Positions 20-18,200 of a stretch of DNA of 64,000 nucleotides are shown in pieces. The translations under genes were made by a program, and so were the position numbers. Position 1 is the first letter of the stretch, and each line of letters opens with the position of its first letter. The notes under the pieces are model-generated. The model was given only the letters and a program-made list of their open reading frames with translations, searched no databases and had not been told where the DNA came from. Source of the stretch: Mytilus trossulus (lineage: Eukaryota); assembly GCF_036588685.1 (NCBI RefSeq), contig NC_086381.1:3596001-3660000 (forward strand), read 5' to 3'.

Positions 20-243
20 TAGACAAAATTGACTTTTGTCATGACAAATATGAATTTTGTCTACAAAAATGAATTTTGTCATGACAAAAATGAATTTTGT
101 CTACACAAATGAATTTTGTCATCACAAAATTGAAGTTCTCACAAAACAAGTCTGTAGCACATAGTTTTGTAAGACAAAAATGATTTTGTTATGACAGAAT
201 TGAATTTTGTACAAAACCACAAGAGTCCCATTCGGCGCCCCGT
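20..243. repeat. Degenerate ~21-bp tandem repeat (GAATTTTGTCATGACAAAAAT), probably the subterminal array at the end of a DNA transposon
   Basis: Several copies of gaattttgtc(atg/ct)acaaaa with a palindromic core ttttgtcatgacaaaa, ending in a GC-rich terminus (cccattcggcgccccgtag). Confidence 0.6.
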
Positions 244-1299
244 AGAGGGATACAAAAATTATTTTACAAGAATCATGTACATCCAATATCATTTTGGTCT
301 TTTCAAATTTCTTAGATATGTACTTTTTCAATCATTATAAAAAAAGATGAAATAATATGCATTTTGTTCTTAGAACTGAGAAAAATCACAAAAATACAAA
401 ATTGACAGCATGGTAAATGTGACACAAAAAAGCGTCAAAATATGATATAATGTTTATATATTAACACCTACCTATTGTTTTTTGTGTCGGAATCCATTTG
501 TACTTTTAATTTGTAGGCTTATCGAAGAAAGTATCAAGATTGGCTATATCCGATTAAATTAAATTGCAAAATAATAAGGGGAAAAGCTAGAAGAGGTCTA
601 CAAACAACATATCAGTTCATATCTTTATAATACTTTATGATAAAGACAACAAAAAAGCTTTACAATTCTAATTTTGTAAGGTTAATTTATTGACACAGGT
701 AGGGAAGATTTCAATTAAAGGAGCTGTGCTTTAATAGCCGCCATCAATCCGAGATCGTCAAATTCGACTGAGAGGATCACGACTTCAACACCCACTTTAA
801 CATTCACAGAGATGGTAAAATAACTAACGTTAGCATACTAAATGTCCTACGCCTGTAACATGCACTATGTTAAGTTACTAGTCAAAAGAAGCATCAAGAT
901 ATCTCGTACAACACCATGACTAAAACGAGGAAAAAAAACCCACAAAGTTGTACACGAAATACTTTATTGCATCTCGGAAATATTACTCCACACGTATTCA
1001 ATTGCTAATGTGTACTGGGCTTTTAAATATTTGCCCAGTTTTGAGCGTACCTGACGAAGTATAATCCAGAAAAGGCCATATATCTGATGCAATAGTATTT
1101 TCATTTATTATCCCTCGATCGATATCGCTGCTGGCGAACAAAATTTTCCCGTGTAAATCCTCGCATGCTGATCAGTACTATAGTAGTCCGTGTTTCGGTA
1201 CTGACATAATTTAAAACTTACGTTGTTTTTTTTTAAATCGACGTACAACCAGAAACTATTAGGAAAACAAAGGTTACACTGAACGCTCCGACAGGTATT

Positions 1300-1420
1300 C
1301 CCAACTTTAAACACGAGCTGTACTATTTTACTGAAACAATGGTATACCCTACTTCCAAAACGAGGCTATACTATTTTACTGAAACAATGATAACCCTACT
1401 TCCAAACCGAGGCTATACTT
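1300..1420. repeat. ~48-bp tandem duplication overlapping the GPCR stop codon
   Basis: tactattttactgaaacaatg..ccctacttccaaa.cgaggcta occurs twice, plus a decayed third copy. Confidence 0.75.
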
Positions 1421-2553
1421 TTGAACGTTAACAATTGTCTTGTTTCTTTTCTGAAATCCAAATCCATAAAAGCATAGATAAACGGATTGACGATATTGTT
1501 TACAATATACATTCTATAAATAAATAGAATTCCGGGTCGTTCATTGTCGGAGAAGTTCTGCCAGAAATATGGATTAAGACCTTCAATTACTATCAGTATC
1601 ACTTTAGGAATATAACTTATAAGAAATAGTATTGTAATCATCATGAACATTATTGTAAATTTATGTACAAGCCTCTTATTTATATCAGCACTTCCTGTTG
1701 AATTTTTGACCTTTGACTTAGTTTTTGGTGTTATTCCTTCCGGTTCATATTTTTCTATTTCTGGATTTGATTCCTTATGTTCCGTCGCAGGTCCGTCACC
1801 ACAGGAAATAACAGACGTGATAGTGTGCATTTCTGTGTCAATATTTGAACTTGTTTGTTCTTTACCAGATGAGAATGAATTGTTCTTGTTTTTGAAATGA
1901 ACGTATACCTTATGCCCAATTCGTATATAGAAAAAAATCATAATTGTCATAGAAGTCAAAAGCATAATGATAATAACAATACCATACAGGAGCGTCAACG
2001 TTTTGTTAACTTCCTTTAACTTGCTACATCGTGTACCTATTATACTTCCATCTGAATTCGGAAAATCAACGGATCCATACAGCGCGGTTATCGGTGCCGC
2101 TGATACAAAGGCGACACCAAAAGACAATCCTACCGCCAAACGTTTATGGAATTGTTTCATTTGATGACGTTGAGGTTTACATACTTTAAGATATCTTTGT
2201 GTGGCGATAATAAGTAACAATAAAACAGACATATATTGCGTAAAAGCTGCAAAAAACCACCAGGCCTTGCATAAACGTGTGCTGGTAAATTCTGTCTGCA
2301 TCATATTCAGTGCAATTCCGAACGAACCACAAACTGTAGCTCCTGCCAAATCCGAAACAGCCAATATCGGAATAAAATATCTGTCCTCGGATTTTTTCCT
2401 CATTCGAAATCTATAAACTATTATAACAGTGGTGTTCCCAATAATTCCCAAAAATATGTATAGTGATAATACGATGATGTTTGGAATCAAGATTTTCGAT
2501 AACTTAGAGTTCCACACCGAAACTGCATTAGAATTTGTGAAATTGGTCTCCAT
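1396..2553 (-). CDS. Rhodopsin-family (class A) GPCR, peptide-receptor-like orphan, intronless coding region
   Basis: Seven hydrophobic segments; TM1 GN, TM2 LAVSD, TM3 Cys (LCK) with QRY in place of DRY, ECL2 Cys, TM7 NPFIY; N-terminal NFT sequon. Likely start is METNF at 2553, just after a ttttcag acceptor; the ORF track extends to 2601. Confidence 0.9.
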   Translation of the reverse strand: METNFTNSNAVSVWNSKLSKILIPNIIVLSLYIFLGIIGNTTVIIVYRFRMRKKSEDRYFIPILAVSDLAGATVCGSFGIALNMMQTEFTSTRLCKAWWFFAAFTQYMSVLLLLIIATQRYLKVCKPQRHQMKQFHKRLAVGLSFGVAFVSAAPITALYGSVDFPNSDGSIIGTRCSKLKEVNKTLTLLYGIVIIIMLLTSMTIMIFFYIRIGHKVYVHFKNKNNSFSSGKEQTSSNIDTEMHTITSVISCGDGPATEHKESNPEIEKYEPEGITPKTKSKVKNSTGSADINKRLVHKFTIMFMMITILFLISYIPKVILIVIEGLNPYFWQNFSDNERPGILFIYRMYIVNNIVNPFIYAFMDLDFRKETRQLLTFKSIASVWK

Positions 2554-4484
2554 AATTAGAGACTGAAAACGCAGGATCGGTATTACAGTCATAAATAACA
2601 ATGAAGGAAACCTGATAAATCAATCCATGAAGTTAAATACAACCAGTCTAGTATGACATAACAATCTTAAGTATATAGTAACATTTTCATTATTAGTTAA
2701 TATAACGTCGAATTGCCAACTGTTCAGTTATCAAGTAAAATTTAAAATTGAATCACAATAATGAATTTTTAAAAACAATACTATACCTGAATGAATTTGT
2801 GTTCATATTTAGTTATTTCTATAAATATATTGAATATACAATTTGTCAGAGTATAAATAAATAAAATGAAATATCAACATTTCACTTGAAAAAATTTAAT
2901 GGAAAGGAACCAGGAAGTGATATAAGAATAAACAATTAACAAAAAAAAGCCAACAACAAACAAACGCCTTCAATGTGATTGTTAATGAGATAACCCTATG
3001 TTTGAAACACCATCGAAATTCTGTAAATCGTATTGACATATATAACTATACAGCAACATCTCAATACAAATTGATGTGTTATTTTTGGTCTCTTGTGGAG
3101 AGTTGTCTCATTTACAATCATACCACATCTTGATTTTTTATATATATAAAATCGTATTCACATATAAGTCTACAGGAACATCAAAATAAGCATATAATCG
3201 TATCGACTTGTTCCTATACAGGAAAGTCAAAATAAACATAAAACCGTATACACGTATATCTATAGAGGAACATTAAAATAAACAAAAAATCGTATCGACT
3301 TATACGTATTCAAGAACGTCAAAATTTTCACCAGTCACTTAATTCATCTTTAAGGAGAAACCGCTCGAATTCAGATTTAAAATTCACAAGAAAAACAACT
3401 ATGCTGAATGAAACCAATCTTAAAAAAATACCAGGACCAGTCGACGAAATTCGATTCCGTAGTATAACAGCTTTTGGTTTTAGATGGATGTTTTTACGAC
3501 TGTCACAATAGAAATGTCCAGATACTCTTGCTCAAAAACACATTTCAGTGTAACATATCTTTTATCTTCAATTGAATAAAATTTTAATCTGACAATATCC
3601 TGTTATTAAAGGCTACACGGCTGGATAATATACAGGTCTATCAGGCCCAACACGAAGAGGGAAAAGACTACACCCAAGTCTTTCAATGTTTAATCAATAT
3701 GCACCATGCATAGCATTTTTAATTCTTGTTCATATTTTATAACACTTATTTCTTCATATGTATATTTGATGATACAAAAACAAGTTGTTGATTGAAAAAT
3801 ATAGGTGTGTAATCCTTGTAATTTTGAGTTCATTTCTCATTTTCATCAATAAACATGATATAAGGATACTTGTTGAAAATTAAAATTATTTTCATATACT
3901 TCTTGTCTCATCTGTAACGGTTGTATATTTAAAAAAAACAACCAGTTAATTACTTAATCAAACTCTACTGACATGCCTTTTTAAAACAAAGTTGAACCTA
4001 CTATGCAGTTTTGTTATTGCGATATCAAATAAACGGAATATGAGATAACATGTGTACCTAAATAAGCAGGAAATCGTAAGATTTATATGCAATAGTAAAA
4101 TATGAAACATGCAATTGGATGTAATGGGCAGTTCTCAGTAACATTACATGTAGCTGTGTGCTTCGTACAATTTTAAGATCATAATGAGGATGTTAGTTTG
4201 AAATGAACAACAAAACAGCTAAACGAATTGTAGATTTATAAATGGACACACATTTATAAAGTACAGGAAAATCACTTAGCTATGAATTAACATAAGGAAA
4301 ATGATACTATTGTATTTTTAACAACATTACTTATAAACACATTGTCAAGTACATTCAAACAATAATATTATATAAAGCAATGCTCACAGTTACTTATGTA
4401 TTTCATATCTCATAGATTAAAACCAGATCAGAAATAATTGATTGATTGGATTTAGTTTAAGTTATGCCTCTCTTTGTATATACA

Positions 4485-4890
4485 AAATTTAGTCCTTGTA
4501 TCTATAATGAGTTTATTTACAACCACTGGGTCGATGCCACTGCTGGTTGAGATATATTTCCCCGAGGGTATCACAAGCCCAGTTGTCAGCACTTTATGGT
4601 GCTGACATGAATAGTCATTGATATGGTTATATTTATAAATTTACTGTTTACAAATTTTGATTTTTTTGGAAAACTTAGGCTTTTCTACTTCAGGCATAGT
4701 TTACCGTATCTGAATTTGGCAACACTTTTAGGAATTTTGGTACTCAATGCTCTTCAACTTCGTACTTTATTTGGCTTTTCTTTTAAAACTTTTTTTGGAT
4801 TTGAGCGTCACTGACGAGTCTTATGTAGACGAAACGCGCGTCTGGCGTAAAAAAAATAAAATAGCCCTGGTATCTATGATAAGTTTATTT
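4485..4890 (+). mobile_element. Non-autonomous interspersed repeat (family with GATGAGTCTTATGTAGACGAAACGCGCGTCTGGCGTA)
   Basis: Related copies at about 8210-8580 (-), 25755-25965 (-), 26860-27090, 44690-44760, 46005-46325 and 56635-56735 (-). Confidence 0.75.
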
Positions 4891-5424
4891 GTAAAGACAT
4901 TATAATCAGTCAGGGGAAAACACGACCTTGACCAAAGCCAAGATACAGGTATCGATCGATTGAAGAGCCATGCATGTGCATATGTATAAAACAAATAACA
5001 TTTAGTTTGATTGTTGCGTTCCTTGCGTATTCTAGTAAAAATACTTCCAAGGGCTGTCAAATGATTAGGCTTGGGCGTGGCTGGCGGTTGGTAATTAAAA
5101 AAAGGATAAGAACGCACGGAATTTATAATGTGTTATTTTCATTATCAAATAAGACTAATAATTTTTATGAACACAAACTCCATTGTTTTAAACGTGATGA
5201 GATAGAATTGCAATTCTTTTATATAATTGGTAGTACTTTTTTAATGCTCGTGACGGGTACAAATTTACAAATAACTGGTAGATAGAGTATTCCTTTGAAG
5301 TATGATTAAAAAGATACAGTGCTTTACAACACTGAGGATGGAGCTGTTCTAGCTTCAATTACGTTATGTTAAATAATTCGGAAATTCGTAAAACTGACAG
5401 TCATACACTTTTGTTCTTTCAGTA

Positions 5425-6180
5425 AATAATTCAAAATTTGATGACTATGTTGAACGCATCTATCCGATCAAACTAGAGATAAAGGATACTACAGATGCAG
5501 TTAAGTCGGCCTCATATCTTGACCTACATCTATAAGAAATTGACAATGAGGGTCGGTTGAAAACAAAACTTTACTACAAAAGAGATGATTGCAGTTTTCC
5601 AATTGTGATTTTCCATTTCTAAGTAGCAACATTCCAGCAGTCCCTGCATACGGGATAGATGTCTCGCAATTGATACGATATTTCCGTGCTTGCATTTCCT
5701 ATGATTTTCTTGAAAGAGGGTTGCTGCTTACAAGGAAGAGTTTAAAACCAAGACTACCAGATAGTGAAGTTGAAATCATCCCTTCGAAAATTATACGGAC
5801 ACCATAACGAGTTGGTTGACCGTTATGGAATAACCGTTTCACAAATGATATCGGATATTTTCCTCATGTCGTAACTACAATCCCCTTCCCTTTCATGGAT
5901 GTATGTGACCTACCGAAGTAGACTATTTACCGGATTTGTTATCACATAAGCAACACGACGGGTGTCACATGTGTAGCAGGATCTGCTTAACCTTCCGGAG
6001 CACCTGCGAACACTCCTAGTTTTTGTTGGGGTTCGTGTTGTTTATTTTGTAGTTTTCTATGTTGTGTCATTTGTACTATTGTTTGTCTCTTTGTTTTTTC
6101 ATTTTCAGCCATGGCGTTGTAGGTTTATTTTCGATTTATGAGTTTTCTGTTCCTCTGGTATCTTAAGTTCCTCTTTTACA
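5425..6180 (+). mobile_element. Penelope-like retroelement reverse transcriptase C-terminal fragment (pseudogene) with 3' tail
   Basis: Frameshifted translation SKFDDYVERIYP.KLEIKDTTD..KSASYLDL..EIDNEGRLKTKLY.KRDD..FPFLSSNIPAVPAYG..SQLIRY.RAC, typical of the PLE RT thumb region. Confidence 0.75.
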
Positions 6181-6963
6181 CTTTTTTCATTTTATCGAGA
6201 AAAAAAATGTATATCCATGACAATTTGAATAACTTGTAACCAAAGTAGGATAACTCAATATATCTATTATTACTTCTATATAGATATAGGAAGATGTGGT
6301 GTGAGTGCCAATGAGACAACTCTCCATCCAAATAACAATTTAAAAAGTAAACCATTATAGGTTAAAGTACGGCCTTCAACACGGAGCCTTGGCTCAAATA
6401 GTTGATTACAGTAATCAAAACTTTAGTTAAAACAAAAACAGAAAATAGGGAGAGAGAATACAGGTTTGTCATAATATATAGCAGTTTCTGTTTCACTAGT
6501 AGTGTATAGGAACAACAAACTAGACGATACTTCGCTTTTTACGATCTTATAAATGAGTAAAATAAAATAAGGTTGTGGCATGTTAGATGTATGTTTCCTT
6601 TAACATCTGGTGTTCAGCTAGGCTGTCTGATGTTTATCCACTCCAGTTATTACACAGTGACAAAACTTTAATCAATTAAAAAATAATAGACTTTTTTCTC
6701 TGAAAGACGATAAATCTGATCTGCATGTAGTTTTTTTTAAACAACTTAAAAAAAATATACGATAAGTTAGGTTAAACAAAGGAAGATATGATGATATAAC
6801 ATGTATCATATCAAACATGAGCATCCTATTTTTGTATCTATCAGTGTTACTTTAGTTCTTGTCAAGAATTATTATCATGATTAGTAATAATATGACAAAC
6901 TATATAATGTGCATTGTAAACAAAGTTAGATAACTCAATTTATCTGATTTTTTGATTATTTCT

Positions 6964-7422
6964 GGTTACAAGAGCGCAATTATTCGTAATGCATTTTCCA
7001 TAGGGTACCACTAGTGTTCCGTATTTTTTTTCTCGAAGACTACACAAACTAGCGAAAAACGGGTGGCAGTTCCTGTTACTAGCAATGCCAGTGTTGCATT
7101 ATAACCAAAAACAAATATAGGGTCATGCGGCTCAAATTGCCTTAAAATGCAGTTGAAAAAAATCGTCTACTTTTTTCGCTTAATGAAAAAGGCATATTTT
7201 TAATGGCTCCGACGTGCAGAAATTGAAGATATTTTCTATACTTCGTAAAATGTGAATATGATTTTCGGCAATTTTTAAACCTAATTGGATAAGCTTTCGA
7301 TTAAATGTAATTCCAATCCTGTATCAACCAATCAGAAGCCGTATATGATTCTATTCTGAGTACCATCTTGGGGTAAAAAACTTGCCGGTTAAATGTAAAC
7401 AAATAATTGCGCTCTTGTAACC
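6964..7422. mobile_element. MITE, 459 bp, with perfect 21-bp TIRs and a 4-bp TSD (TTCT)
   Basis: GGTTACAAGAGCGCAATTATT at 6964-6984 and its reverse complement at 7402-7422; ttct on both flanks; a second, truncated copy at 57368-57757. Confidence 0.85.
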
Positions 7423-10100
7423 TTCTAGTTAACCTGTTTGATAAAAGTTAGATGCATATCGAATTATGAAGCTGTTTTATATAACATTTATTTGGTGCAT
7501 ATATCAAACAAGCTATTCAATATTATGATATTTTAAATGCCACTTTTCAAATGTGGTATATATATAGGGGCCTCTTTTAGTTTCCTTTCAATGTAAAATT
7601 TGCCAAAATTGAAAGCCGTACGTTGATTATTGGTGGCTTACTTAAGTTTTGTCGTTGTTCGAAGTTGCCATAATTTTATACCAGATTGACGGGGTTCAGT
7701 TTGGAAGTAATTATCTTTGGTTTTAATTTGTAGATGCTGTAGCAGATGTGGTCTGCATTTTGTCCTACGTCTTGTGTACAACTGATTGCAAGCCTCTACA
7801 CCATATACTAATTTCTTTTTTTTACATGAGAAACATGAAATTTAGAATGGAAGTCTGGAATGTTTTAAAAGAAAACAACCCGACCAAAAAGCAGAAGAAA
7901 GCCGAAGACTTTCAACTGAAATCCAACACGCGAGAACATATTATATGTGGAAGCGGATTTCAGCTGACGAATAAAGTAGTGTATACTATTTAAGTGTAAA
8001 TGAACGTCATACTAAACTCCAAAACATATAAAGGAACAAATAATAAAAACAATTCTACAAGACTAAAAATGGCCAGACCCCTGACCTCGGACAGGTGCAA
8101 AAGTGCGGCGGGGTTGAACATAAATAGAACATGTGGTCGGATGGCACAAAGAAATGACACAGATATTAACAACTATAATTCACCGTTCGGCCTTCAACAA
8201 TGTGCCAAAATAGTTATCAAAGGTACCAGGATTATAATTTAATACACCAGACACGCTTTTCGTCTACAGAATACCTTATCAGTGACGCTCAGATCAAAAT
8301 AGTTAAAGAGCCAAAAAAGTACAAAGTTGAAGAGCATTGAGGACTCAAATTTTAAAAAAAGTTGTCTCAAAAACTGCTACGGTAATATGTTCCTGGGATA
8401 ATGCAATCATTTAGTCTTCGAACAATTCAAAGTTTTGTAACATGAAATTCATAAAAATTACCATAGAATTGATATTCATTTCAACATCAAAGTGCTGCCT
8501 ACTGGGCTGGTAATAACATCGGGACGAAACGTCCACCAGCAGTGACATCGATCAAGTGGTGTAAATATTTATCAAAGGTACATAGTCAACTATAAAAGTC
8601 CACGAATTCAAAATGACAACTGTAAAACAATTCAGACGGGAATAATAACGGTTCAGTAATGTACAAAAAAATGAGCGCAAACAAATATGTAACGCATCAA
8701 CAAACTGGCACTGAATTATGTGGTCTTAACATAGGACATGCTCATACATACAGAATGTGTCGGAGTTGCGCATGTTAGCAGGATCCCTATCCTCCCGTAA
8801 TATAAGACACTGTGTACTAGTACAACATAAGAACGAACTATAAAAATCAGTTGAAAAAGGCTGAACTCATCACATAGATACAAATAGAAATTAACTAGCA
8901 AACATAACACAACAAACAGAGAGGACGTGGCCGGGTACATATACATCTTAACAACAACAAGTCCCTAAGTACAGATCTGAGTGTACTCACAGTTGATGAC
9001 TGCTGATTCAAAGCCACTGAAAAGTAATGAAAACAGATCATGCATCTAAGAATAAACATGTTAAGTGATATCTCCTCCCCCAACTACACATAACCAATGT
9101 AAAATAATGTAAAATAAACAAACACGAATCAATACGCTTAGTAAACCCAGTTTAAAACAAGTCCACTGGCAGAATATGTAAAAAAAAAACTAAGCAAAAT
9201 GACATGATCCATAAATTAAAGAAGGACTACTAACAGTTACTGACATGCCAGCTCCAGACCACAATTAGACTGTTTGAAAGATGATGTCTTCGGCATATGG
9301 GAATCACATAATAGATATAAGATAACATTACATCCATCATCATCATTTAAATGTTGTCCGCAAATTTAAAATTTACGGACGACAAGCTTCTTTAAGAACT
9401 TACTTGTTTCATGGTGGTTCCTAAATTGATTTTAAATGGATAGTATTTATGAGAAGCCAGTGAGTTGATTATTATTGTTCATGGATCTAAGGATGCAACA
9501 AATACTCAAGAGTTGAAATTGAATATAATTTTCAATGTATAGTTATATTTATAAGAATAAGAATACGAATAAGAATAAGAATTTTATTAGTTTAAAATCC
9601 AAACAATAGGATTGTTACTAAAATACACAACAAAAACACCAAACAAAAAGACAGTGGCATATTAATTAAAAAACGATACTACAAACATGTTACATTGAAA
9701 GGAAAACAAAAACATAGATTATATTTACATGTTTATATGACATTACATAGAGAGACATTCATATTGATATTTAAGAAGCAAATTGACATGTACAGTTATA
9801 ATAACCGTCGTAATGGTAAAATAATGAAAATAACACATGAACATATTATGCGTTTGAAGCCTGTTTCTAACTTCAATTAAAAACAACCAAAGCCGAATAT
9901 TTGAAACCAAGGATGTTTGAGAACCGAAACAATTCAGAATCTATATGACAAGACCAGACATACAAGTTAAATCCATCTTAGGTCAACTTTTTCTGAGAGT
10001 GTTGAGATCTTAGTTTCTTAAGAATTCCTATATATAAACGGACTTAAACAAAACGAAAAACAATCTTAACTCATGATATAATTTTATTTTTAACAAGTAT

Positions 10101-10319
10101 TGTTGTAAAGGTGCAATAATTTGATATACCTTTCTTACTACTAGTATAAGATGTCGTCTTGGTAGAATAGACTAATAGGGCAGGAATCCCAGGACTGGAG
10201 ATCACTACAAGTGGGTCGTCTGAGCTCCGGATATATTCTGCGAGGTTGGGCAGTAAATACTAATTAAAGTTCCGGTAACAAATCTGGTTATGGCAATAAC
10301 TTTTCGGACCTTTACTACA
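10101..10319 (-). repeat. 3' LTR (219 bp)
   Basis: Direct repeat of 14990-15202 with roughly ten substitutions and a 6-bp indel; termini TGTAGTAAAGG...CCTTTACAACA; preceded on the minus strand by polypurine tract GGGGAGGAA (10320-10328). Confidence 0.95.
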
Positions 10320-10471
10320 TTCCTCCCCGTTGTATTAAAACGTCAGCCATCAATGCGGACACTAATAAACGATATGCTAAAATCCTTCACCGAACCAAAA
10401 AACAAATTCATAACTGTCAACCAATCAATCATCAGGTTAAAAGCATATATACAAATTCCCTCCTCCTGCAT

Positions 10472-10756
10472 TTAATCTATATTATACAGTTGTCTGGCAT
10501 TCCGAGTTGTCACGCTAGCTATTTCCTCGGAGTGTACGTCAAACATGGATGCGAGCTTCCAGATGATTTCCTTAAGTAGTCCAGGGGATGCATCGTGGTG
10601 TCCTTGAGGTTTAAGATAGGGTGAGTCAGTCTCCGAAACTAGATCCTCCAACTTCATCTCACAAACGGTTGCTCTATAACCTGTATACTTGTTATCCATG
10701 AGTAGGAACGGAGAGATACCAAATTTACCGTTTGGAAACATGGCTTTACATGGCAT
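10472..10756 (-). pseudogene. TatD-family DNase C-terminal fragment inside the retrotransposon
   Basis: FPNGKFGIS...LEDLVSETDSPYLKP...P..L..I...LA.......EEIASVTTRNARQLY matches the TatD ETDxPYL motif and terminal helix; the N-terminal part is missing. Confidence 0.8.
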
Positions 10757-12649
10757 CTACATCCCAAAAATAGTAGAGTATACCATTTCTAAATTCAAGT
10801 TGAGATTTTGACTGCCACAAATGCCTTACCAATGGGCTACTCATCTGTAAGTCTTGTTTTGAAGGAGAGAAATCAGTAGATAACCAGGCAATAATAGTAC
10901 TCAGATCTATGTCATTCTTTTGTGCGTCTCTTAATTCAGTTTCAGTATAAGGCTGTAATATCTTCCCTTTTGTGGATGTGACATCTTTAATGCTTACAGC
11001 ACGTACTGTTAGTGGTTTAACTAAGTCTACTTCTTCTTCAAATGTGGACCACTGATTCCGGGCTCTTATACAGTATTTACAACCTCCACATGGAAGATTA
11101 TTAAGTGGAATACTTGACAAGTACGAATTGCATTCATTAAGTGTATCTGGGATTCGTGAAAGAGCATCTGCGTTTACATGTTTTTTACCTGGTCTATGTT
11201 GAACTAACATGTTGTATTGTGATAGTTCCTCAATCCACCGAGCTAGTTGACCTTCAATATTCTTGAAATTTAACAGCCAAGTAAGACTATTATGATCTGT
11301 ACGGACAACAAACTGGTTACCTAGTAAATAATGTCTATACCGCCTTGTAAAAGTGACAATAGCCAATAACTCCTTTCGAGTTGTACAATACTTTTTCTGA
11401 GCTGGCGTTAAAACCTTTACTTGAAAAGCTTATAGTTCTTTCTTTTCCATCTTGTAGTTGGCTAAGTTCAGCACCAATGGTTTTGTCTGAGGCATCAGTA
11501 TCAAGTATGAAGGTAGCTTCTGGATCAGGATAGGCTAACACAGAAGAATTTACTAGTGCTATTTTTAGTTGTTCAAAAGCATTTTCCTGTTCTTCAGTCC
11601 ATACAAACTCCGATTTTCCTCCTATTAATTTATGCAGAGACACAGCAATTTCAGTATAATTCTTTATGTGTTCCCTGTGGTAGTTTGTGAACCCGAGAAA
11701 AGATTCCAGCTCCTTTTTTTTCTTTGATCTTGGCCAACTTTTTACAGTCTGCATATTCTCCGGATTTACTGACATACCATCGTTGTTTACAATTTTTCCC
11801 AAAAACTTGACTTCTTTTTGAAATGAGAATCATTTGGACGGTTTAAGTTTTAAATTGTAGTACTGAAATCTTTTTAAGATGTGCAGAAGCTTAAATGATC
11901 ATCAAAACTGTGACCTAAAACGATGACATCATCCAAATATGCAAGGCATTCTCTCCATGTCAGACCTTTCAAAACCAACTGAATGACTCGGCTGAAAGTA
12001 GCTGGTGAGTTATATAACCCAAAAGGCAGTCGGACATGCTCGAAAAGTCCATATTTCGTGACGAAAGCCGTTTTATGTCGATCTTTCTCATCGATCTCTA
12101 TTTGCCAATATCCTGCAGCCATGTCCAACGTACTCATGTAGGCACTTCCTCTCAAAGTATCCATACAAGACTCAATCTTTGGCAAAAGAAAAACGTCCTT
12201 AGTTGTCACTTTATTAAGGGGACGAAAATCAATACAGTACCGCAGACTGCCGTCCTTCTTTCTTACTAAAACAGGACAGGAACACCAATCTGAAATAAAA
12301 GGTTTAATAACCCCCTTATCTAACATTTGACTAAGATGTTTTTCTTCTTCATTTTCAAATTTCAGTGGAGTTCTACGCATTTGTTGTTTAACTGCAGCTG
12401 CCTCCCCTGTGTGAATTCGATGTTTAATATCCCCATTAAACAATCCCAGATCCATGTCGCCTTTAGAAAAAATATTTTGAAATTCAATGAGTACTTCAGC
12501 AATCTTTATGCTATGATCTATGTCAAAATCTTTTACTGTTCGAGTATACAAATCTTTTAGGTGTTCTGGAATCTTAGAATTGAGTTCTTTTAATTTGTTG
12601 AGTTTATTTACAGAATTCTCATCTTTTAGTATAGTACAAATTGTTGTGG

Positions 12650-12950
12650 ACGGGTTGAGAGAAAATCTGTCACCTTGGGGCGGACTGACAGAAAATCTAT
12701 CACCTTGGGGCGGACTGACAGATAATATGTCACCTTGGGACGGACTGACAGAAAATCTTTCACCTTGAGGCGGACTGACAGAAAATCTGTCACCTTGGGA
12801 TGGACCAGCAGAAACCCTGTCACCTACACGTACCTTTTCCATTGTCTCGAAATTACCAGTTGGCGAACTGACAGAAAGTCTGTCACTTATGGTTTCTAAT
12901 GTTTTACACGAATTTGGATTATCGACATTGACAGAAACTCTGTCACTATG
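12650..12950 (-). repeat. 30-bp in-frame tandem repeat in pol (GDRFSVSPPQ, about 6 copies plus 2 dispersed)
   Basis: cggactgacagaaaatctgtcaccttgggg units between protease and RT. Confidence 0.9.
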
Positions 12951-13729
12951 TACTTCAGGGTCTTCAGCCAAATCACCCTGAGCAGTTACAACGTTGTATA
13001 TCTCCATACCAATACCAAATTTATGGCCACCTTTCAATGTGATAAAAGTGTCTGTGTCGTTTCGAAATACATCCTTCACGGTTTCATCCTTAGCAATTAA
13101 AGCATTTGGGGACAGAAGACCTTTTAAATTGGATTTCGGCTGAATGATTATATCATCAGCTGGGGGGTGATCAATTTCCATATCAACTATTTTTAAACTA
13201 TGAGGTGGCACAAATGTTTTCTTTTTTATACTAATCCTGTATAAGTTTATTTCTTCTCCCTCGTTCCCAACAAAACAGACCGCTGGTATAGCCTCATTGT
13301 TTGCGTGGACTGTGTAGTTTGCCATATCAATAACTGCTCCAAATTTCTCCAAAAAATCAATACCCAGAATGATATTATCATTTATGTTAGCAGTTACAAA
13401 CCTCCATTTTGATTTTAACTTCCCTATTTCAATAGGAATCTCCTCTGTATATCTAGCATCAATTTTAGAATTTTTTCCAGCTCCTCTCAAAACTAAATGT
13501 TCCTTTAGTTTAATTGTTGAATGCAAAAGTGGTAAAATTGAAGTACTCAAAACAAATATTTGTGCTGCACTATCTATTACAGCCTTAAATGTTCTGCCTA
13601 AAATTTTCATCTCAATGAACAAGGTTTTTGATTTTTTGCTTTTATCAAGTGAAAAAATTTCTTGAATCGAAAACTTCTGTTCTTGACCAGACATTTCTGT
13701 TGGCGGTTGGCCTGTATCATCTGAAAAGG

Positions 13730-13769
13730 TCAAGGATTGGCCTACATCCTTGGCCCTGAATCGTTTAAA
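13730..13769 (-). promoter_or_regulatory. gag-pol -1 programmed ribosomal frameshift signal
   Basis: Slippery heptamer T TTA AAC (13769-13763) in the gag frame, followed by stem CAAGGAT-gtaggcca-ATCCTTG. The -1 frame reads FKRFRAKDVGQSLTFSDD, continuous with the pol ORF. Confidence 0.8.
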
Positions 13770-14499
13770 GCTTTTGGTGATGGAGATCTATTACGATAGG
13801 GAGAACTGTTTCTGGGTTTCTTGCAATCCCTACTAAAATGACCTTCTTCCCCGCAATTGTAGCAATTACCTCTTGCAGGACTATTGTACCTTCTTTGTGG
13901 CGAAAAAGCTCGATCTGTTCCTTGTGGTGACCTTGACCTGTATTTTTTCCTTCCAATAATTGACCAGGACTACTTTTTTCCTCTTTTTCGGCTATTACTT
14001 TTTCTACCTTAAGCACAGTTTCTTTCTGCTGTAGTTGATTTTCTTTGAATATTCATGTATATCTTTAATTTCATCATTCTGTGATTTAATCATTTATTTC
14101 ATTTGTTCAATTTGTTCCTCTTTCTGTTTTGCATAAATGTCTCTTTGTTGTTCAAAAGTAAGCCTCTGTTCTTCTATCTGTGCTTTACTCTGTTCAGAAA
14201 TTTTCTCAATTTTTGTTTGAAAAGTCTCTGCCATATCATCTCTCGACTTTTCTACCGACAAAATCTTATGACGTAATGACTCAATAGTGTTTTTTAGAAC
14301 CTCTTGACCTTCATCAGACTCCTCTGGGTGCAGTCCACAATGATTGGGGTGCTTCTGAAATCTCTTTAAGTTTATCTAAATTAAGTAATCCCTCTTCTTC
14401 TCTCTTTGCAATTATTGCTAAGGCTCTAGTTTCACCTATCCTTTTAATCGCTTTTAACTGCGTAAAGTTAGCTTTGTTTATATTTATCGGTTTCGCCAT
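13742..14499 (-). pseudogene. gag: gag pseudogene: N-terminal helix-hairpin-helix, coiled coil, CCHC zinc knuckle
   Basis: MAKPININKANFTQLKAIKRIGETRALAII (HhH_3/ComEA-like); E/K/Q-rich coil in a shifted frame; CYNCGEEGHFSRDC at 13864-13823; only ~750 bp, so the capsid region appears deleted. Confidence 0.8.
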
Positions 14500-14975
14500 T
14501 TTATTTTACGCAATGTTTATAATTATGCGATTTATTATTTACTAAATAACCGTGTAGCGGTTTGTCGCAATCTGTCAGTCACACTGACACAATTATATAA
14601 ATATGCAGTTTATCATTTACTGAATAACAAAATAGCGGATTGTCAGTAACACTGACACTGATTTATAACGATAAGATAATTGTTCAATGATTAGCCATAT
14701 TGCGGAGTGTCAGTAAAACTGACACCAGGAATTTTTCAAAATTTTCAAATATTATCAAAGTAGGTATTTCTATGAAAACAAATGGATGTAAGGGCAAACG
14801 GTTGTCAGAAATTCTGACATTAAATTTCCATGATTTTTATACTCATGAAATATGTAATGTTCTTTTCTGTAGGTACAATAACTATTTGTTTTCTTTGTTG
14901 TGATTTTTCAGTTTTGCCGCCAAAATGTCAGGAAACAATGAATGTCTCGAGTCGATTTAAAGTAAATTCAAACCG

Positions 14976-14988
14976 ACTTCTGACACCA
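14976..14988 (-). promoter_or_regulatory. Primer binding site complementary to the tRNA-Leu 3' end
   Basis: TGGTGTCAGAAGT one base inside the 5' LTR boundary; complements ACTTCTGACACCA of tRNA-Leu(CAA). Confidence 0.85.
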
Positions 14989-14989
14989 A

Positions 14990-15202
14990 TGTTGTAAAGG
15001 TGCAATAATTTGATATACCTTTCCTAATATAAGATGTCGTCTTGGTAGAATACCCTTATAGGGCAGGAATCCCAGGACTGGAGATCACCACAAGTGGGTC
15101 GTCTGAGCTCCGGATATATTCTGCGAGGTTCCGCAGTAAATACTAATTAAAGTTCCGGTAACAAATCTGGTTATGGCAATAACTTTCCGGACCTTTACTA
15201 CA
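14990..15202 (-). repeat. 5' LTR (213 bp)
   Basis: Direct repeat of 10101-10319, adjacent to the PBS. Confidence 0.95.
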
Positions 15203-18200
15203 TTATTGCTAAAAGTGTGTGTATATGGTTAACAGACCTTTTACCTTTTACCCTCGAAGATGTGTTTCTATATGAAGGAAACTAATAACCACGAAATATT
15301 TTTTTTCCATTATTCACTTTTACTGTATAGCTCTAGAAAGCATAACCTGTTAGGTAAAAGTGTCACTGACCTGCTTGAAATATACTAAATACCAAAAATA
15401 TATTTAACCAAAACGCTGTCATGAAAATATGTGTCATAAGTTTATTATTGTTGCATATACATGTGATTGTTAGACGATCAGGAAAAATAAACTTTTTATA
15501 GGTCAATCATTTGGAATTATATACCAAGTCATATGTAGATTAATTTTAAGTTGTATTTATTCTTTGGAACAAATTATAGAAAATCTAAACAGAGACGAAC
15601 AAGACCATAGGAAAAATAGAAACTCGTATGCTGATGAGAGATTGACAAAATCATGGCAAACCAAAACATCCAGAAAAATAACAAATAGACTAACAAAAGT
15701 TTGAAACATAGTGCATAAATTATAAAGATTTTGCCAAAGTGCAAAGCTGATTTAAGATGAATTTGGCTTAACTAATCTTTAATGTCAATGCTGGTCATAT
15801 TAGTTCTTCACGTGTGTAGGTATACTACCTGGGCTTTAAAAGGTTGGGATCCAGCATTTTTGATGAAGTTAAATCCACAAATGCGCTTCGGACGAACAAA
15901 AACCTTTAAAGTGTTATTTTCATTGTAAATTTGAGATTATTACCTGTAAATTAATTCTTGTTTCGTCTATATACTATATATGACGTCCATTATCACTGAA
16001 CTAGTATTTTCTTTTTGTTTGATGCTCAGCTAAAGCACGCCTCTTAGTGCGTTTTTTCTCGCTGCATTGAATACCGATTGGTGGCCTACGGCTTTTTTCC
16101 GCTCTTTGGTCGGGTTGTTGTCTCTTTGTCACATTCCCCTTTCCCTTCTCAATTCTATTGTTATCACATGTTTAAGAAAATTTGAGAATGAAGTAGGTTA
16201 ATCGGCGAATGCACACATGAAACAAATACTTCTACTCAATTTTGATTAATAGCATATACATATGATAAACAAAACAAATCTCTATAGTAAGCCACGTGAT
16301 ATTAAATGCACACCTGTTGTTATTATGAGTGTTTTCCCACTGATATGTAGGCCAACCGAATGTGGGGAAACCCCTTAGGTGACCATAACATATCCATCTT
16401 GGGATATTGATAAATTGTTTGTGGTAGGCAGAAAAAAGAGTTATTACATGAAGTCATTTATAATATATTTATTTCAAAGTCACGACTGTGGTTAACATAA
16501 TAAAAACATCTTGTTCTTAAAATCAGACACACAAAAAATTGAACTTATTCAAATTGTAATGAAAATCTAAAATCTAATTTCCCAATTCGATACAACAACA
16601 TGTATTTTTTTTTGTAATTTCTGACATGTTTTTCTGTCACTTTAAAATGCATTAATTTGGTTTCATACGAATTTCTTTATAAGAATGTATCAATTAAATC
16701 ATATTTTTATGTAAGCGATTGCAGTGTTTTTACACAATAAAAAGTTTAGGGGAAGTAGTTCGACATATCGATGTTTTGTTATATATGCAAAAAAGTAAAA
16801 ACACAAAAATACTGAACTCCGAGGAAAATTCAAAAAGAAAAGTTCCAAATCTAATGGGAAAATCAAAAGTTCAAACACATCAAACGAATGGATAACAACT
16901 GTCATATTCCTGACTTGATACAGACATGAACAGTTATCACAGACAAAAATAATTTCTAGTATGACTATGATAATTGTTTATATAAAATAGTTTGTAATGT
17001 TTGTATATCAATGCGTAGATTCAGTAACATAATATTCTACAGTAAGAACAGTTCTATAGCTTCCTCGTTCTCAAATATACCATTCCTAGAAATGTCTTCA
17101 AATTACATGAAATCTTGAGAATGAAAAGATAACATTTTTATAAATGACGCACTGCAATAAGAGCTTCGGAAAATTAAATTGCTGCCATTTCATTTACCAG
17201 ATGAAAATAAACTTTTTAAAATGGTGCGTACTAAACGCTTTTCTTGATTTAAAAATGTACCCAAAGGAACGGTCAAATCAAATATTTGAAAGCCATCCAT
17301 AAGAACAAACGCACAAAGAGCTATATGACTTGCTATATAACGATTACTATATAATAGTCAATGAAACAATTAGAAGATGTTGTGCTATTACATTGGCACG
17401 ACTCTGTTAAATCATGAAAATACTATAAGAAATTTAAAACTATGAAAAGTAGATAGTTGTTCTTCATTATCAAATTTATATAATAAAAGGACATGTGGGA
17501 TAAATGAGGCAGCAGACCGATGCACCTATCCCCATAACATCTGAAGTCGCCTATAATATTTTATCAATGATATTATATCTATAATCCATCCGGACAGAAT
17601 AATCACAATGTACGAACATGACTGTCTAATTATCTATGGAATTAGAAAAGATAAAGCTGATCTTCAAAAAAAAATATACTTATATGTAGTTTGATTTGTC
17701 ATTTTCTATATAATTTTCTAAATATTTAAATAGTAGTAGTTGAACGTTGTTAGTAATAGTTCAAAAGGATTAAATGCAGATATTTAGAGGTTAATTGGGA
17801 GATTAGCAGTTTAAAACTTACAGACATGAAACGCAGTTGGGAAAAGTGTTGCCATTTTATTAACGAAATTTCATGCAAGATGTCTAATTTACAGACATGG
17901 TAATTATTATTATTAACCTAGATAATGTTCTAATTTCATAATTTGTTTTGCCAATTCATTCAACTGAGAGGTAGTAGGACACACTGTACAATATATTTAC
18001 ATGGTGTCTCTTCTTTTTCCTTCTGCTGCTGCTGGCGATAATGATAATGAGTTGATGTAAAGTTTGCGAACTTTTAAAAGTCAAGGAATTTAATTATACT
18101 TTATGGGACAGCTGTTTATCGATTTGATATACACTATAACCATGAGTGGTGATTCTGGCTTCTCTGATGTCAGATTGAGGTTATTAAAATGAAAAAAAAA

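What the first reader, a model, noticed from the sequence alone, without database searches (positions are those of the whole stretch)
10101..15202. Gypsy LTR retrotransposon carrying a TatD nuclease between pol and the 3' LTR
Seen: inside the LTR boundaries and in the same orientation as pol, 10472-10756 encodes ETDSPYL...TTRNARQLY, ending ~150 bp before the PPT. Established: this is the C-terminal signature of TatD metal-dependent DNases (3'-5' exonuclease/AP endonuclease), which are not standard LTR-element cargo. The pol frame breaks at GILYYFWD, just before integrase should start, and abuts the TatD frame, so one deletion probably removed integrase and the TatD N-terminus. Inference: intact relatives encode a captured TatD as an extra ORF that might process cDNA, proofread or clear nucleic acids sensed by the host. 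Such elements would also inflate TatD gene counts in genome annotations.
Basis: partly seen in the sequence, partly recalled or inferred. Interest (0 to 1): 0.85.

Follow-up and report, generated by a model that had tools for sequence, protein, structure and literature searches.

The report
Mussel Gypsy retrotransposons carrying TatD nuclease
The window holds a dead, internally deleted copy of a mussel Gypsy retrotransposon whose complete relatives carry, after pol, a conserved extra gene for a zinc-finger TatD nuclease, an accessory gene that the searchable literature does not report for LTR elements.

Summary

**The window copy.** Window 10101-15202 (minus strand) is a 5.1-kb Ty3/Gypsy copy. 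Its LTRs are 96% identical, and it has a 4-bp target-site duplication (TSD) with one mismatch and a polypurine tract. ORF 10472-10756(-) matches the last third of Pfam TatD_DNase (E 1.2e-12).

**Full-length relatives.** Two 8.7-kb copies on contig C1 show that the window copy lost 2,783 bp (integrase plus the first 389 codons of the TatD gene) and about 755 bp of gag. In these copies, pol with integrase is followed by a separate 483-aa ORF3. ORF3 has two C2H2-like fingers, a helical linker and a complete Class II (HxH) TatD domain.

**Spread in this genome (a Mytilus).**
- At least 60 intronless TatD ORFs are dispersed through the genome.
- In 16 of 20 sampled subfamilies, a Gypsy pol lies directly upstream on the same strand.
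- All metal ligands are invariant, and omega is about 0.12 between subfamilies.
- The pol and TatD trees agree.
- Some elements have identical LTRs.

**Beyond Mytilus.** The N-terminal domain is also present in a multi-copy Crassostrea protein. Annotations of four Mytilus species name these ORFs tatD, TATDN2, HI_0454-like or YabD-like.

**What remains open.** Function is inferred, not shown. Other first readers of this scan noted the same architecture elsewhere in this genome. I found no paper that describes it.

The parts
10097..10100 (-). 3' copy of the 4-bp target-site duplication (ATAC in element sense, against ATAA at the 5' side; one mismatch)
   Evidence: The two C1 copies have perfect 4-bp TSDs (GATA, GTAT).
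10101..10319 (-). 3' LTR (element sense), TG..CA
   Evidence: 96.2% identical to the 5' LTR
10320..10330 (-). polypurine tract (GGGGAGGAA) abutting the 3' LTR
   Evidence: read directly from the sequence
10472..10756 (-). remnant of ORF3: the C-terminal 94 aa of the ZnF-TatD nuclease (residues about 390-483 of the full ORF). It lacks the HxH, Glu and two His ligands, so it cannot be active.
   Evidence: PF01026, E 1.2e-12, profile 170-253/253; 91% identical to residues 390-481 of the C1 ORF3
10751..10760 (-). junction of the 2,783-bp internal deletion (integrase plus the 5' 1.2 kb of ORF3). It has an 8-nt filler and ATG microhomology.
10746..11802 (-). pol: RNase H domain and the pre-integrase linker, in two frames (ORFs 11335-11802 and 10746-11366), ending at GILYYFWD
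   Evidence: RT_RNaseH_2 E 1e-20; RT_RNaseH E 2e-13
11874..13733 (-). pol: aspartic protease, a linker of 30-bp tandem repeats, and reverse transcriptase (619-aa ORF)
   Evidence: RVT_1 E 1e-19; gag-asp_proteas/RVP; repeats at 12618-12825
13734..14499 (-). gag remnant: an N-terminal helix-hairpin-helix ORF (14314-14499), a coiled region, and a CCHC knuckle near 13823-13870. It is broken by frameshifts and by a deletion of about 755 bp at about 13940.
   Evidence: HHH_3 E 9e-8
14970..14988 (-). primer-binding-site-like TGG... stretch 2 nt after the 5' LTR
   Evidence: No matching tRNA gene was found.
14990..15202 (-). 5' LTR (element sense)
15203..15206 (-). 5' copy of the target-site duplication (ATAA in element sense)

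Best explanation
Window 10101-15202 is an old, non-autonomous copy of a low-copy Ty3/Gypsy family of a Mytilus genome, and it carries two internal deletions. Full-length members of this family have the order LTR, gag (with an HhH N-terminus), PR-RT-RNaseH-IN, ORF3, PPT, LTR. So do members of a whole clade of Gypsy families in the same genome. ORF3 is a separate gene of about 480-590 aa. It has two C2H2-like zinc fingers, a helical linker and a complete Class II (HxH) TatD metal-dependent nuclease domain. ORF3 has been inherited together with pol since the common ancestor of these families and is kept under purifying selection, so it serves the element and is not a passenger. Inferred mechanism (not shown): the fingers tether a two-metal TatD nuclease to the element's replication intermediates. 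There it trims 3' ends or cuts abasic sites in cDNA, as TATDN3 and YcfH do, or removes the RNA strand of RNA:DNA hybrids, as TATDN2 does. The window copy keeps only the last 94 residues and encodes no active nuclease.
For: Shown:
- TatD Pfam hit in the window.
- A 2,783-bp gap relative to two full-length copies, each with its own 4-bp TSD.
- In the C1:1275972-1284667 copy, a 998-aa pol ORF with integrase followed 67 nt later by an open 483-aa ORF3. It matches PF01026 over positions 1-253 of 253 at E 1e-41.
- 89 TatD matches in the genome, many as open frames of 490-600 aa in near-identical multi-copy sets.
- Pol directly upstream on the same strand in 16 of 20 sampled loci, with pol identity 45-62% and TatD identity 25-48%.
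- Invariant H217/H219, E314, H352, H378/H380 and D433, plus CxxC...H...H twice in the N-terminus.
- dN/dS of 0.12 between subfamilies and 0.4-0.5 between young copies.
- Pol and TatD trees share all supported clades.
- 100% identical LTR pairs around elements with open gag, pol and ORF3.
- The AF2 model has a TIM barrel with TM 0.82 to S. aureus YcfH and 0.81 to human TATDN3, and two beta-beta-alpha fingers.
- The N-domain is conserved in a Crassostrea angulata protein that has 153 members on 77 contigs.

From the literature:
- HxH defines Class II TatD enzymes, which have 3'-exonuclease and AP-endonuclease activity (PMC10085689).
- TATDN2 degrades the RNA strand of R-loops (PMC10711561).
Against: - There is no biochemical or expression evidence.
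- The substrate is a guess.
- Four of 20 sampled TatD loci had no full Gypsy pol upstream. Two are gag-TatD deletion derivatives, one sits behind an RT fragment and an OTU ORF, and one has nothing recognisable.
- All three copies of the window's own family have at least one defect.
Confidence: 0.8

Rival explanations
1. Counter-defence reading. ORF3 does not help cDNA synthesis. It destroys by-products such as abortive cDNA, RNA:DNA hybrids or damaged or modified ends, which would otherwise trigger the host's nucleic-acid sensing or restriction. This would be analogous to what the host exonuclease TREX1 does to retroelement DNA in mammals.
For: - A nuclease with intact ligands, under selection.
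- Sister families in the same clade add other end-modifying enzymes: Tpt1/KptA RNA 2'-phosphotransferase fused to pol, and NADAR fused to ZnF-TatD proteins in ENA assemblies.
- TatD nucleases are used in conflicts elsewhere: QatD in anti-phage defence (PMC13434339) and parasite TatD against extracellular traps (PMC10085689, introduction).
Against: There is no direct evidence. The TREX1 analogy rests on general knowledge and was not tested here. This reading and the replication-helper role are not mutually exclusive.
Confidence: 0.25
2. One-off capture. The TatD piece in the window is a fragment of a host gene that recombined into this single element copy and has no meaning for the family.
For: The window copy holds only a C-terminal fragment, next to a deletion junction.
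Against: Two other copies of the same family hold the complete ORF at the same place. Fifteen other subfamilies do too, and the trees are congruent.
Confidence: 0.01
3. The ZnF-TatD ORFs are a host multigene family into or next to which Gypsy elements insert preferentially, not part of the elements.
For: Genome annotations treat them as genes.
Against: - ORF3 lies inside the LTR pair, between pol and the PPT, with TSDs outside the LTRs.
- The ORFs are intronless and occur in near-identical dispersed copies.
- They co-diverge with pol.
Confidence: 0.03
4. ORF3 is an env-like gene for cell-to-cell transfer, because it occupies the env position.
For: It lies between pol and the 3' LTR, as env does in errantiviruses.
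Against: The whole ORF is explained by zinc fingers plus a soluble TIM-barrel nuclease. The N-terminus is acidic, with no signal-peptide-like start, and there are no coiled-coil or fusion-protein hits. No transmembrane predictor was run.
Confidence: 0.02

Closest known systems
Juno/Vesta LTR retrotransposons of bdelloid rotifers with a DEDDy 3'-5' exonuclease or GDSL esterase ORF3 (Rodriguez, Kenefick, Arkhipova 2017, PMC5408684)
   Same: LTR retrotransposons carrying an enzymatic third ORF downstream of pol. The catalytic residues are intact and there are no env features. The proposed auxiliary role is in processing nucleic-acid 3' ends.
   Different: - The fold and chemistry are unrelated: DnaQ-like DEDD against a TIM-barrel two-metal TatD.
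- The host phylum differs.
- Here the ORF is fused to C2H2 fingers, shows clear purifying selection (omega 0.12) and co-diverges with pol. The rotifer ORFs showed no departure from neutrality and were gained several times.
Cellular Class II TatD nucleases: human TATDN2 and TATDN3, E. coli YcfH and YjjV (PMC10085689, PMC10711561)
   Same: - HxH motif, Glu, His, His and Asp ligands, and a TIM-barrel fold.
- TM 0.81-0.82 to YcfH and TATDN3.
- TATDN2 likewise has a long N-terminal extension before a C-terminal TatD domain.
   Different: - The ORFs are intronless, multi-copy and sit inside LTRs.
- The N-terminus is a specific two-finger plus helical domain.
- Scores fall below NCBIfam TIGR00010's cut-off: 95-123 against 206 bits.
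- Profile scores to solved structures are highest for bacterial TatD/YcfH (114-130 bits), then TATDN3 (96) and TATDN1 (80).
- The relation to true TATDN2 orthologs was not tested.
Other accessory enzymes of retroelements: dUTPase in some retroviruses and rotifer LTR elements, and the esterase ORF1 of CR1/RTEX LINEs (as summarised in PMC5408684)
   Same: A host-type nucleic-acid or metabolic enzyme is recruited as a stable accessory module of a retroelement.
   Different: The enzyme family differs. None is a TatD.
QatD, the TatD-family nuclease of the bacterial Qat anti-phage system (NCBIfam NF041926; PMC13434339)
   Same: A Class II HxH TatD nuclease recruited into a genetic-conflict system. 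There are weak hits at E 1e-12 to 5e-17.
   Different: It is bacterial, acts on the defence side, and scores far below the family cut-off (47-62 against 230 bits).

Membership tests
Ty3/Gypsy (Metaviridae) LTR retrotransposon | Direct LTRs ending TG..CA, flanked by a short target-site duplication | tested here: met
   LTR pairs in the window and in both C1 copies. The 4-bp TSDs are GATA and GTAT, with ATAA/ATAC in the window.
Ty3/Gypsy (Metaviridae) LTR retrotransposon | pol domain order PR-RT-RNaseH-IN | tested here: met
   Met in full-length relatives: RVT_1, RT_RNaseH, Integrase_H2C2 and rve, in that order. In the window copy IN is deleted.
Ty3/Gypsy (Metaviridae) LTR retrotransposon | PBS complementary to a tRNA 3' end, and a PPT before the 3' LTR | tested here: inconclusive
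   The PPT is present. A TGG... stretch lies 2 nt after the 5' LTR, but no matching tRNA gene was found with a 19-nt pattern.
TatD_DNase (PF01026), Class II | Pfam score above the gathering threshold | tested here: met
   Window fragment: 48 bits against 27. Full ORF3s: 128-146 bits over the whole profile.
TatD_DNase (PF01026), Class II | HxH motif plus Glu, His, His and Asp metal ligands | tested here: met
   Invariant in 10 ORF3s of 22-48% identity. The class definition comes from PMC10085689. The window fragment keeps only the Asp (ETDSPY).
TatD_DNase (PF01026), Class II | TIM-barrel amidohydrolase-type fold | tested here: met
   AF2 pLDDT is 85-97 in the domain. Foldseek gives E 1.6e-14 and TM 0.82 to 6l25, and 0.81 to 2y1h.
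TatD_DNase (PF01026), Class II | Metal-dependent nuclease activity | not testable with these tools
   This needs a purified-protein assay.
Bacterial YchF/TatD exonuclease subfamily (NCBIfam TIGR00010) | Score above the curated cut-off (206 bits) | tested here: not met
   94-123 bits for the ORF3s.
Cellular TATDN2 ortholog (the name given by RefSeq to some copies) | Single host locus with an ordinary gene structure, not inside a mobile element | tested here: not met
   The ORFs are intronless and lie in dispersed near-identical copies inside LTR pairs downstream of pol.
Cellular TATDN2 ortholog (the name given by RefSeq to some copies) | Phylogenetic placement inside the TATDN2 clade | not tested
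   No referenced TATDN2 sequence was available. No TATDN2 chain was among the matches to solved structures.
Retroviral or errantiviral env | Signal peptide, transmembrane anchor and fusion-protein homology | tested here: not met
   Only TatD was found by Pfam. The model is fingers plus a soluble barrel. No dedicated TM predictor was run.

The most novel reading that the evidence does not exclude
A clade of bivalve Gypsy elements has assembled a toolkit of nucleic-acid end-processing enzymes. The parts are the ZnF-TatD ORF3 throughout, Tpt1/KptA 2'-phosphotransferase fused to pol in one sub-clade, and NADAR fused to ZnF-TatD in related proteins. The toolkit would repair or erase host-inflicted damage or modification of the element's RNA and cDNA, or clear immunostimulatory by-products. 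That would make it a retrotransposon-encoded counter-defence system. The N-terminally extended cellular TATDN2 architecture might share ancestry with it.
Probability: 0.15. Interest if true: 0.85.

Novelty: new variant of a known kind. Interest (0 to 1): 0.6.

Why it matters
LTR retrotransposons rarely keep extra enzymes. Each stable acquisition (dUTPase, DEDDy exonuclease, esterase, env) has pointed to a step of the replication cycle or to a conflict with the host.

Here a TatD nuclease with its own zinc-finger domain has been kept under selection across deeply diverged Gypsy lineages. It sits in elements that look recently active in mussels, and at least the protein occurs in oysters. This gives a natural system for asking what TatD nucleases do to reverse-transcription intermediates, since their cellular roles are still debated.

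There is also a practical consequence. Dozens of these ORFs are annotated as tatD, TATDN2, HI_0454-like or YabD-like genes in four Mytilus genomes, and possibly in other molluscs. This inflates gene-family counts and can mimic gene-family expansion or bacterial-like genes.

Tried and rejected
The genomic context of the Crassostrea, scallop, nematode and unnamed ENA/Logan homologs could not be checked.
No RNA evidence was obtained, and read laying was not used.
Two pol-tail matches without a nearby TatD hit (C4:54087704 and C8:27850354) were not followed up, so whether some close relatives lack ORF3 is open.
- **The search for related loci on metagenome contigs** used generic TatD motifs and returned only bacterial-type TatD loci. 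These were not used.
- **The protein-atlas search** gave no usable hit.
- **The listing of cluster members** gave almost no names.
- **The N-terminal domain folded alone** gave a poor model (pLDDT 55), so no fold search was run on it.
- **PBS to tRNA assignment** failed.
- **One-off capture and host-gene-family readings** were rejected.
- **Origin of the TatD** (host TATDN2/3 or bacterial) was not resolved. Only similarity ranks are available.
Full report
**1. The observation**

The region 10101-15202 carries two direct repeats, at 10101-10319 and 14990-15202. They begin TG and end CA, and they are 96.2% identical (205 matches, 8 mismatches, 6 gap columns). All coding pieces between them lie on the minus strand:
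- A 61-aa ORF with a helix-hairpin-helix domain (HHH_3, E 9e-8) at 14314-14499.
- A 619-aa ORF with aspartic protease and reverse transcriptase at 11874-13733.
- Two RNase H pieces at 11335-11802 and 10746-11366.
- A 94-aa ORF at 10472-10756.

The 94-aa ORF matches Pfam TatD_DNase at E 1.2e-12, 48 bits against a cut-off of 27, over profile positions 170-253 of 253. No integrase domain is present. Its stop is about 140-150 bp from a polypurine tract (GGGGAGGAA) that abuts the 3' LTR. The flanks carry a 4-bp duplication with one mismatch, ATAA and ATAC in element sense.

**2. What the window copy is**

A DNA search of the window's own genome (1.30 Gb, 541 contigs) used the pol-tail-to-LTR segment as query. 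It found two close copies on contig C1. In these, the pol tail and the TatD C-terminus are about 2.8 kb apart instead of adjacent.

After fetching them, BLASTN of the window element placed their LTRs at C1:21594910-21603618 (8,709 bp, plus strand) and C1:1275972-1284667 (8,696 bp, minus strand). Identity to the window copy is about 95%, and the two copies have perfect 4-bp TSDs, GATA and GTAT. Relative to them the window copy has two gaps:
- It lacks 2,783 bp at window 10751-10760. The junction has an 8-nt filler and ATG microhomology.
- It lacks about 755 bp in gag near window 13940.

The LTR pairs of the C1 copies are 99.1% and 100% identical, so they are younger than the window copy at 96.2%. 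All three copies of this family have at least one defect:
- The window copy has the two deletions and frameshifts.
- The plus-strand C1 copy has frame breaks in RT/RNase H and in ORF3.
- The minus-strand C1 copy has a break between protease and RT.

I describe these defects only.

**3. What the full-length relatives encode**

In the minus-strand C1 copy, a 998-aa ORF (RT, RNase H and integrase with its C-terminal tail) ends 67 nt before a separate, open 483-aa ORF. Pfam matches this ORF to the whole TatD_DNase profile, positions 1-253 of 253, at E 1e-41, in residues 213-480.

The first 210 residues contain two CxxC...H...H motifs and a conserved helical region. In the AlphaFold model (mean pLDDT 78.8; 85-97 in the TatD domain; 77-86 for residues 30-135) each motif forms a beta-hairpin plus helix, the C2H2 topology. 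Foldseek places the C-terminal domain on S. aureus YcfH (E 1.6e-14, TM 0.82) and human TATDN3 (TM 0.81), followed by other TatD structures.

**4. ORF3 is a family and clade feature**

A protein search of the genome with ORF3 gave 89 matches. Many are open frames of 490-600 aa that recur as near-identical dispersed copies, at 25-48% identity to the query.

I fetched one locus for each of 20 subfamilies and searched them with the C1 pol and ORF3. In 16 of them a Gypsy pol (45-62% identical) lies directly upstream of the TatD ORF on the same strand. The other four are as follows:
- Two are single ORFs that join the HhH N-terminus of gag to the C-terminal part of TatD. These are deletion derivatives of the same kind as the window copy.
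- One has an RT fragment, then an OTU protease ORF, then a CCCH-TatD ORF.
- One shows nothing recognisable upstream.

Two elements from different subfamilies (loci L021, L022) have 100% identical LTR pairs (221 and 226 nt) about 8.6-8.7 kb apart, enclosing pol and ORF3. Another locus (L030) has open gag (756 aa), pol (1,389 aa) and ORF3 (587 aa).

**5. Selection and co-inheritance**

In an alignment of ten ORF3s at 22-48% identity, several residues are invariant: the HxH motif (H217, H219), the Glu of GExGLD (E314), H352, H378/H380 and the Asp of E(T/S)D(A/S)P (D433). In the N-domain, C10, C13, H23, H28, C39, C42 and H60 are invariant.

Nei-Gojobori estimates give dN 0.033 and dS 0.26 (omega 0.12) between two moderately diverged subfamilies. 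A more distant pair also gives omega 0.12, but there dS is saturated. Very young copy pairs give 0.4-0.5, as expected when post-insertion decay is mixed in.

Both trees share all well-supported clades. They differ only in the order of three lineages, where pol support is 16-91. ORF3 was therefore inherited with pol from the ancestor of these families and evolves roughly twice as fast.

**6. Distribution and annotation**

Contig lengths identify the genome as a Mytilus. They equal those recorded for M. trossulus proteins.

Database homologs with the same full-length architecture are named tatD in M. edulis and M. coruscus. Other names are hypothetical or C2H2-domain protein in M. galloprovincialis, and putative deoxyribonuclease TATDN2, HI_0454-like or YabD-like in M. 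trossulus. Two M. coruscus gene models merge the TatD domain with Integrase_H2C2 or with a gag CCHC knuckle.

A Crassostrea angulata protein (153 member sequences on 77 contigs) shares the N-terminal domain as well; hhalign gives probability 99% and E 2e-18. Scallop proteins (Mizuhopecten, Argopecten) and nematode proteins (Plectus, Aphelenchoides) match the TatD domain. The N-domain comparison was run only for Plectus, which shows no similarity there.

A profile search of 1.84 billion cluster representatives returned at least 150 clusters at E below 1e-63. Most of these cover both domains, while the shorter entries cover only part of the profile. Most come from unnamed ENA or Logan assemblies.

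The giant-squid genome paper lists a "TATDN2" among transposon-like genes inside the Hox cluster (PMC6962438). This is a lead and was not tested.

**7. What kind of TatD it is**

The HxH motif defines Class II TatD enzymes: TATDN2, TATDN3, YcfH and YjjV. These bind two metals. [quoted passage not shown] Human TATDN2 degrades the RNA strand of R-loops and has a long N-terminal extension (PMC10711561; PMC10085689).

The similarity ranks are:
- **Solved structures:** the ORF3 profile scores highest with bacterial TatD/YcfH proteins (114-130 bits), then YjjV (107), TATDN3 (96) and TATDN1 (80).
- **NCBIfam:** the best model is TIGR00010, at 94-123 bits against a cut-off of 206.

ORF3 is thus a divergent Class II TatD and not a member of any curated bacterial equivalog. 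Whether it descends from a host TATDN2/3 gene or from a bacterial gene is unresolved.

**8. Mechanism**

Shown: a complete, conserved, selected Class II TatD domain with a zinc-finger N-domain, encoded by a separate gene between pol and the PPT of Gypsy elements.

Inferred: it is an active two-metal nuclease brought by its fingers to the element's nucleic acids. The most likely substrates are reverse-transcription intermediates. Candidates are 3' ends or abasic sites of cDNA, or the RNA of RNA:DNA hybrids. My odds are:
- About 0.4 for a helper role in replication.
- About 0.25 for clearance of by-products or damaged or modified ends as a counter-defence.
- The rest for other or unknown roles.

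How ORF3 is expressed is unknown. The pol-ORF3 spacer varies from 67 to about 320 nt.

**9. Novelty**

Eight full-text searches were run. Six combined TatD or TATDN2 with LTR retrotransposon, retrotransposon, Gypsy, Mytilus or transposable. One sought extra ORFs in retroelements and one sought TatD enzymology. None found a paper linking TatD to a retroelement. Repbase reports and subscription journals are not covered.

The nearest precedent is the DEDDy exonuclease or GDSL esterase ORF3 of bdelloid Juno/Vesta elements (PMC5408684).

Other first-stage readers of this scan noted the same Gypsy-plus-TatD architecture at eight or more other places of this genome. Those notes are unchecked and were not used as evidence.

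I classify the finding as a new variant of a known kind: an LTR retrotransposon with an accessory enzymatic ORF3. The window copy itself is a dead derivative. The interest lies in the clade it led to.

**10. Limits**

There are no RNA data, no context outside this genome, and no further genome letters. The sample was one locus per subfamily and not a census. The tree has 11 elements. Function is wholly inferred.

Noticed in passing
L032 (G000:C5:3301421-3310757) 85-5190 (+); the same family at 12 or more places: One TatD-bearing Gypsy sub-clade has a polyprotein with an open frame of up to 1,819 aa. It begins with a Tpt1/KptA RNA 2'-phosphotransferase domain (PF01885, E 7e-35) and ends with a PHD finger after integrase. 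At least 12 copies are 95-99% identical (11 of them 97-99%), and further subfamilies are 40-45% identical. Its ORF3 is 832 aa, with a long repeat-rich N-terminus before TatD.
   Followed up: partly
P0209, P0210, P0049 (ENA assemblies): Some relatives of the ZnF-TatD protein from unnamed assemblies are fused to a NADAR domain (PF08719). NADAR matches in the window's own genome were not checked for proximity to TatD.
   Followed up: partly
L037 (G000:C14:38786520-38795691) 5414-7675 (+): An RT fragment (RVT_1, E 1.5e-13), then a 301-aa OTU cysteine-protease ORF (E 2e-12), then a 292-aa TatD ORF with a CCCH-like start, all on one strand. TatD may also travel with a different retroelement type.
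   Followed up: partly
window 14314-14499 (-); also L039, L040: Gag begins with a ComEA-like helix-hairpin-helix domain (HHH_3, E 9e-8 in the window and 3e-8 in L040). In L040 and L039 this gag N-terminus is joined in one open frame to the C-terminal part of TatD. These are recurrent gag-TatD deletion derivatives.
   Followed up: partly
window 12618-12825: Five in-frame copies of a 30-bp unit lie in the linker between protease and RT. They encode GDRFSVSPPQ-like decapeptides. The C1 copies have more units.
   Followed up: no
P0277: A 407-aa TatD-family protein scores E 5e-57 against the ORF3 profile, well above typical bacterial TatD scores. It is deposited as part of a 'Candidatus Thiodiazotropha endolucinida' MAG on a 3.9-kb contig. 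It may be clam-host retrotransposon DNA binned with the symbiont.
   Followed up: no
G000:C4:54087704-54087840 and C8:27850354-27850450: Pol-tail matches at 76-80% identity have no TatD hit nearby. They may be truncated copies or relatives without ORF3.
   Followed up: no
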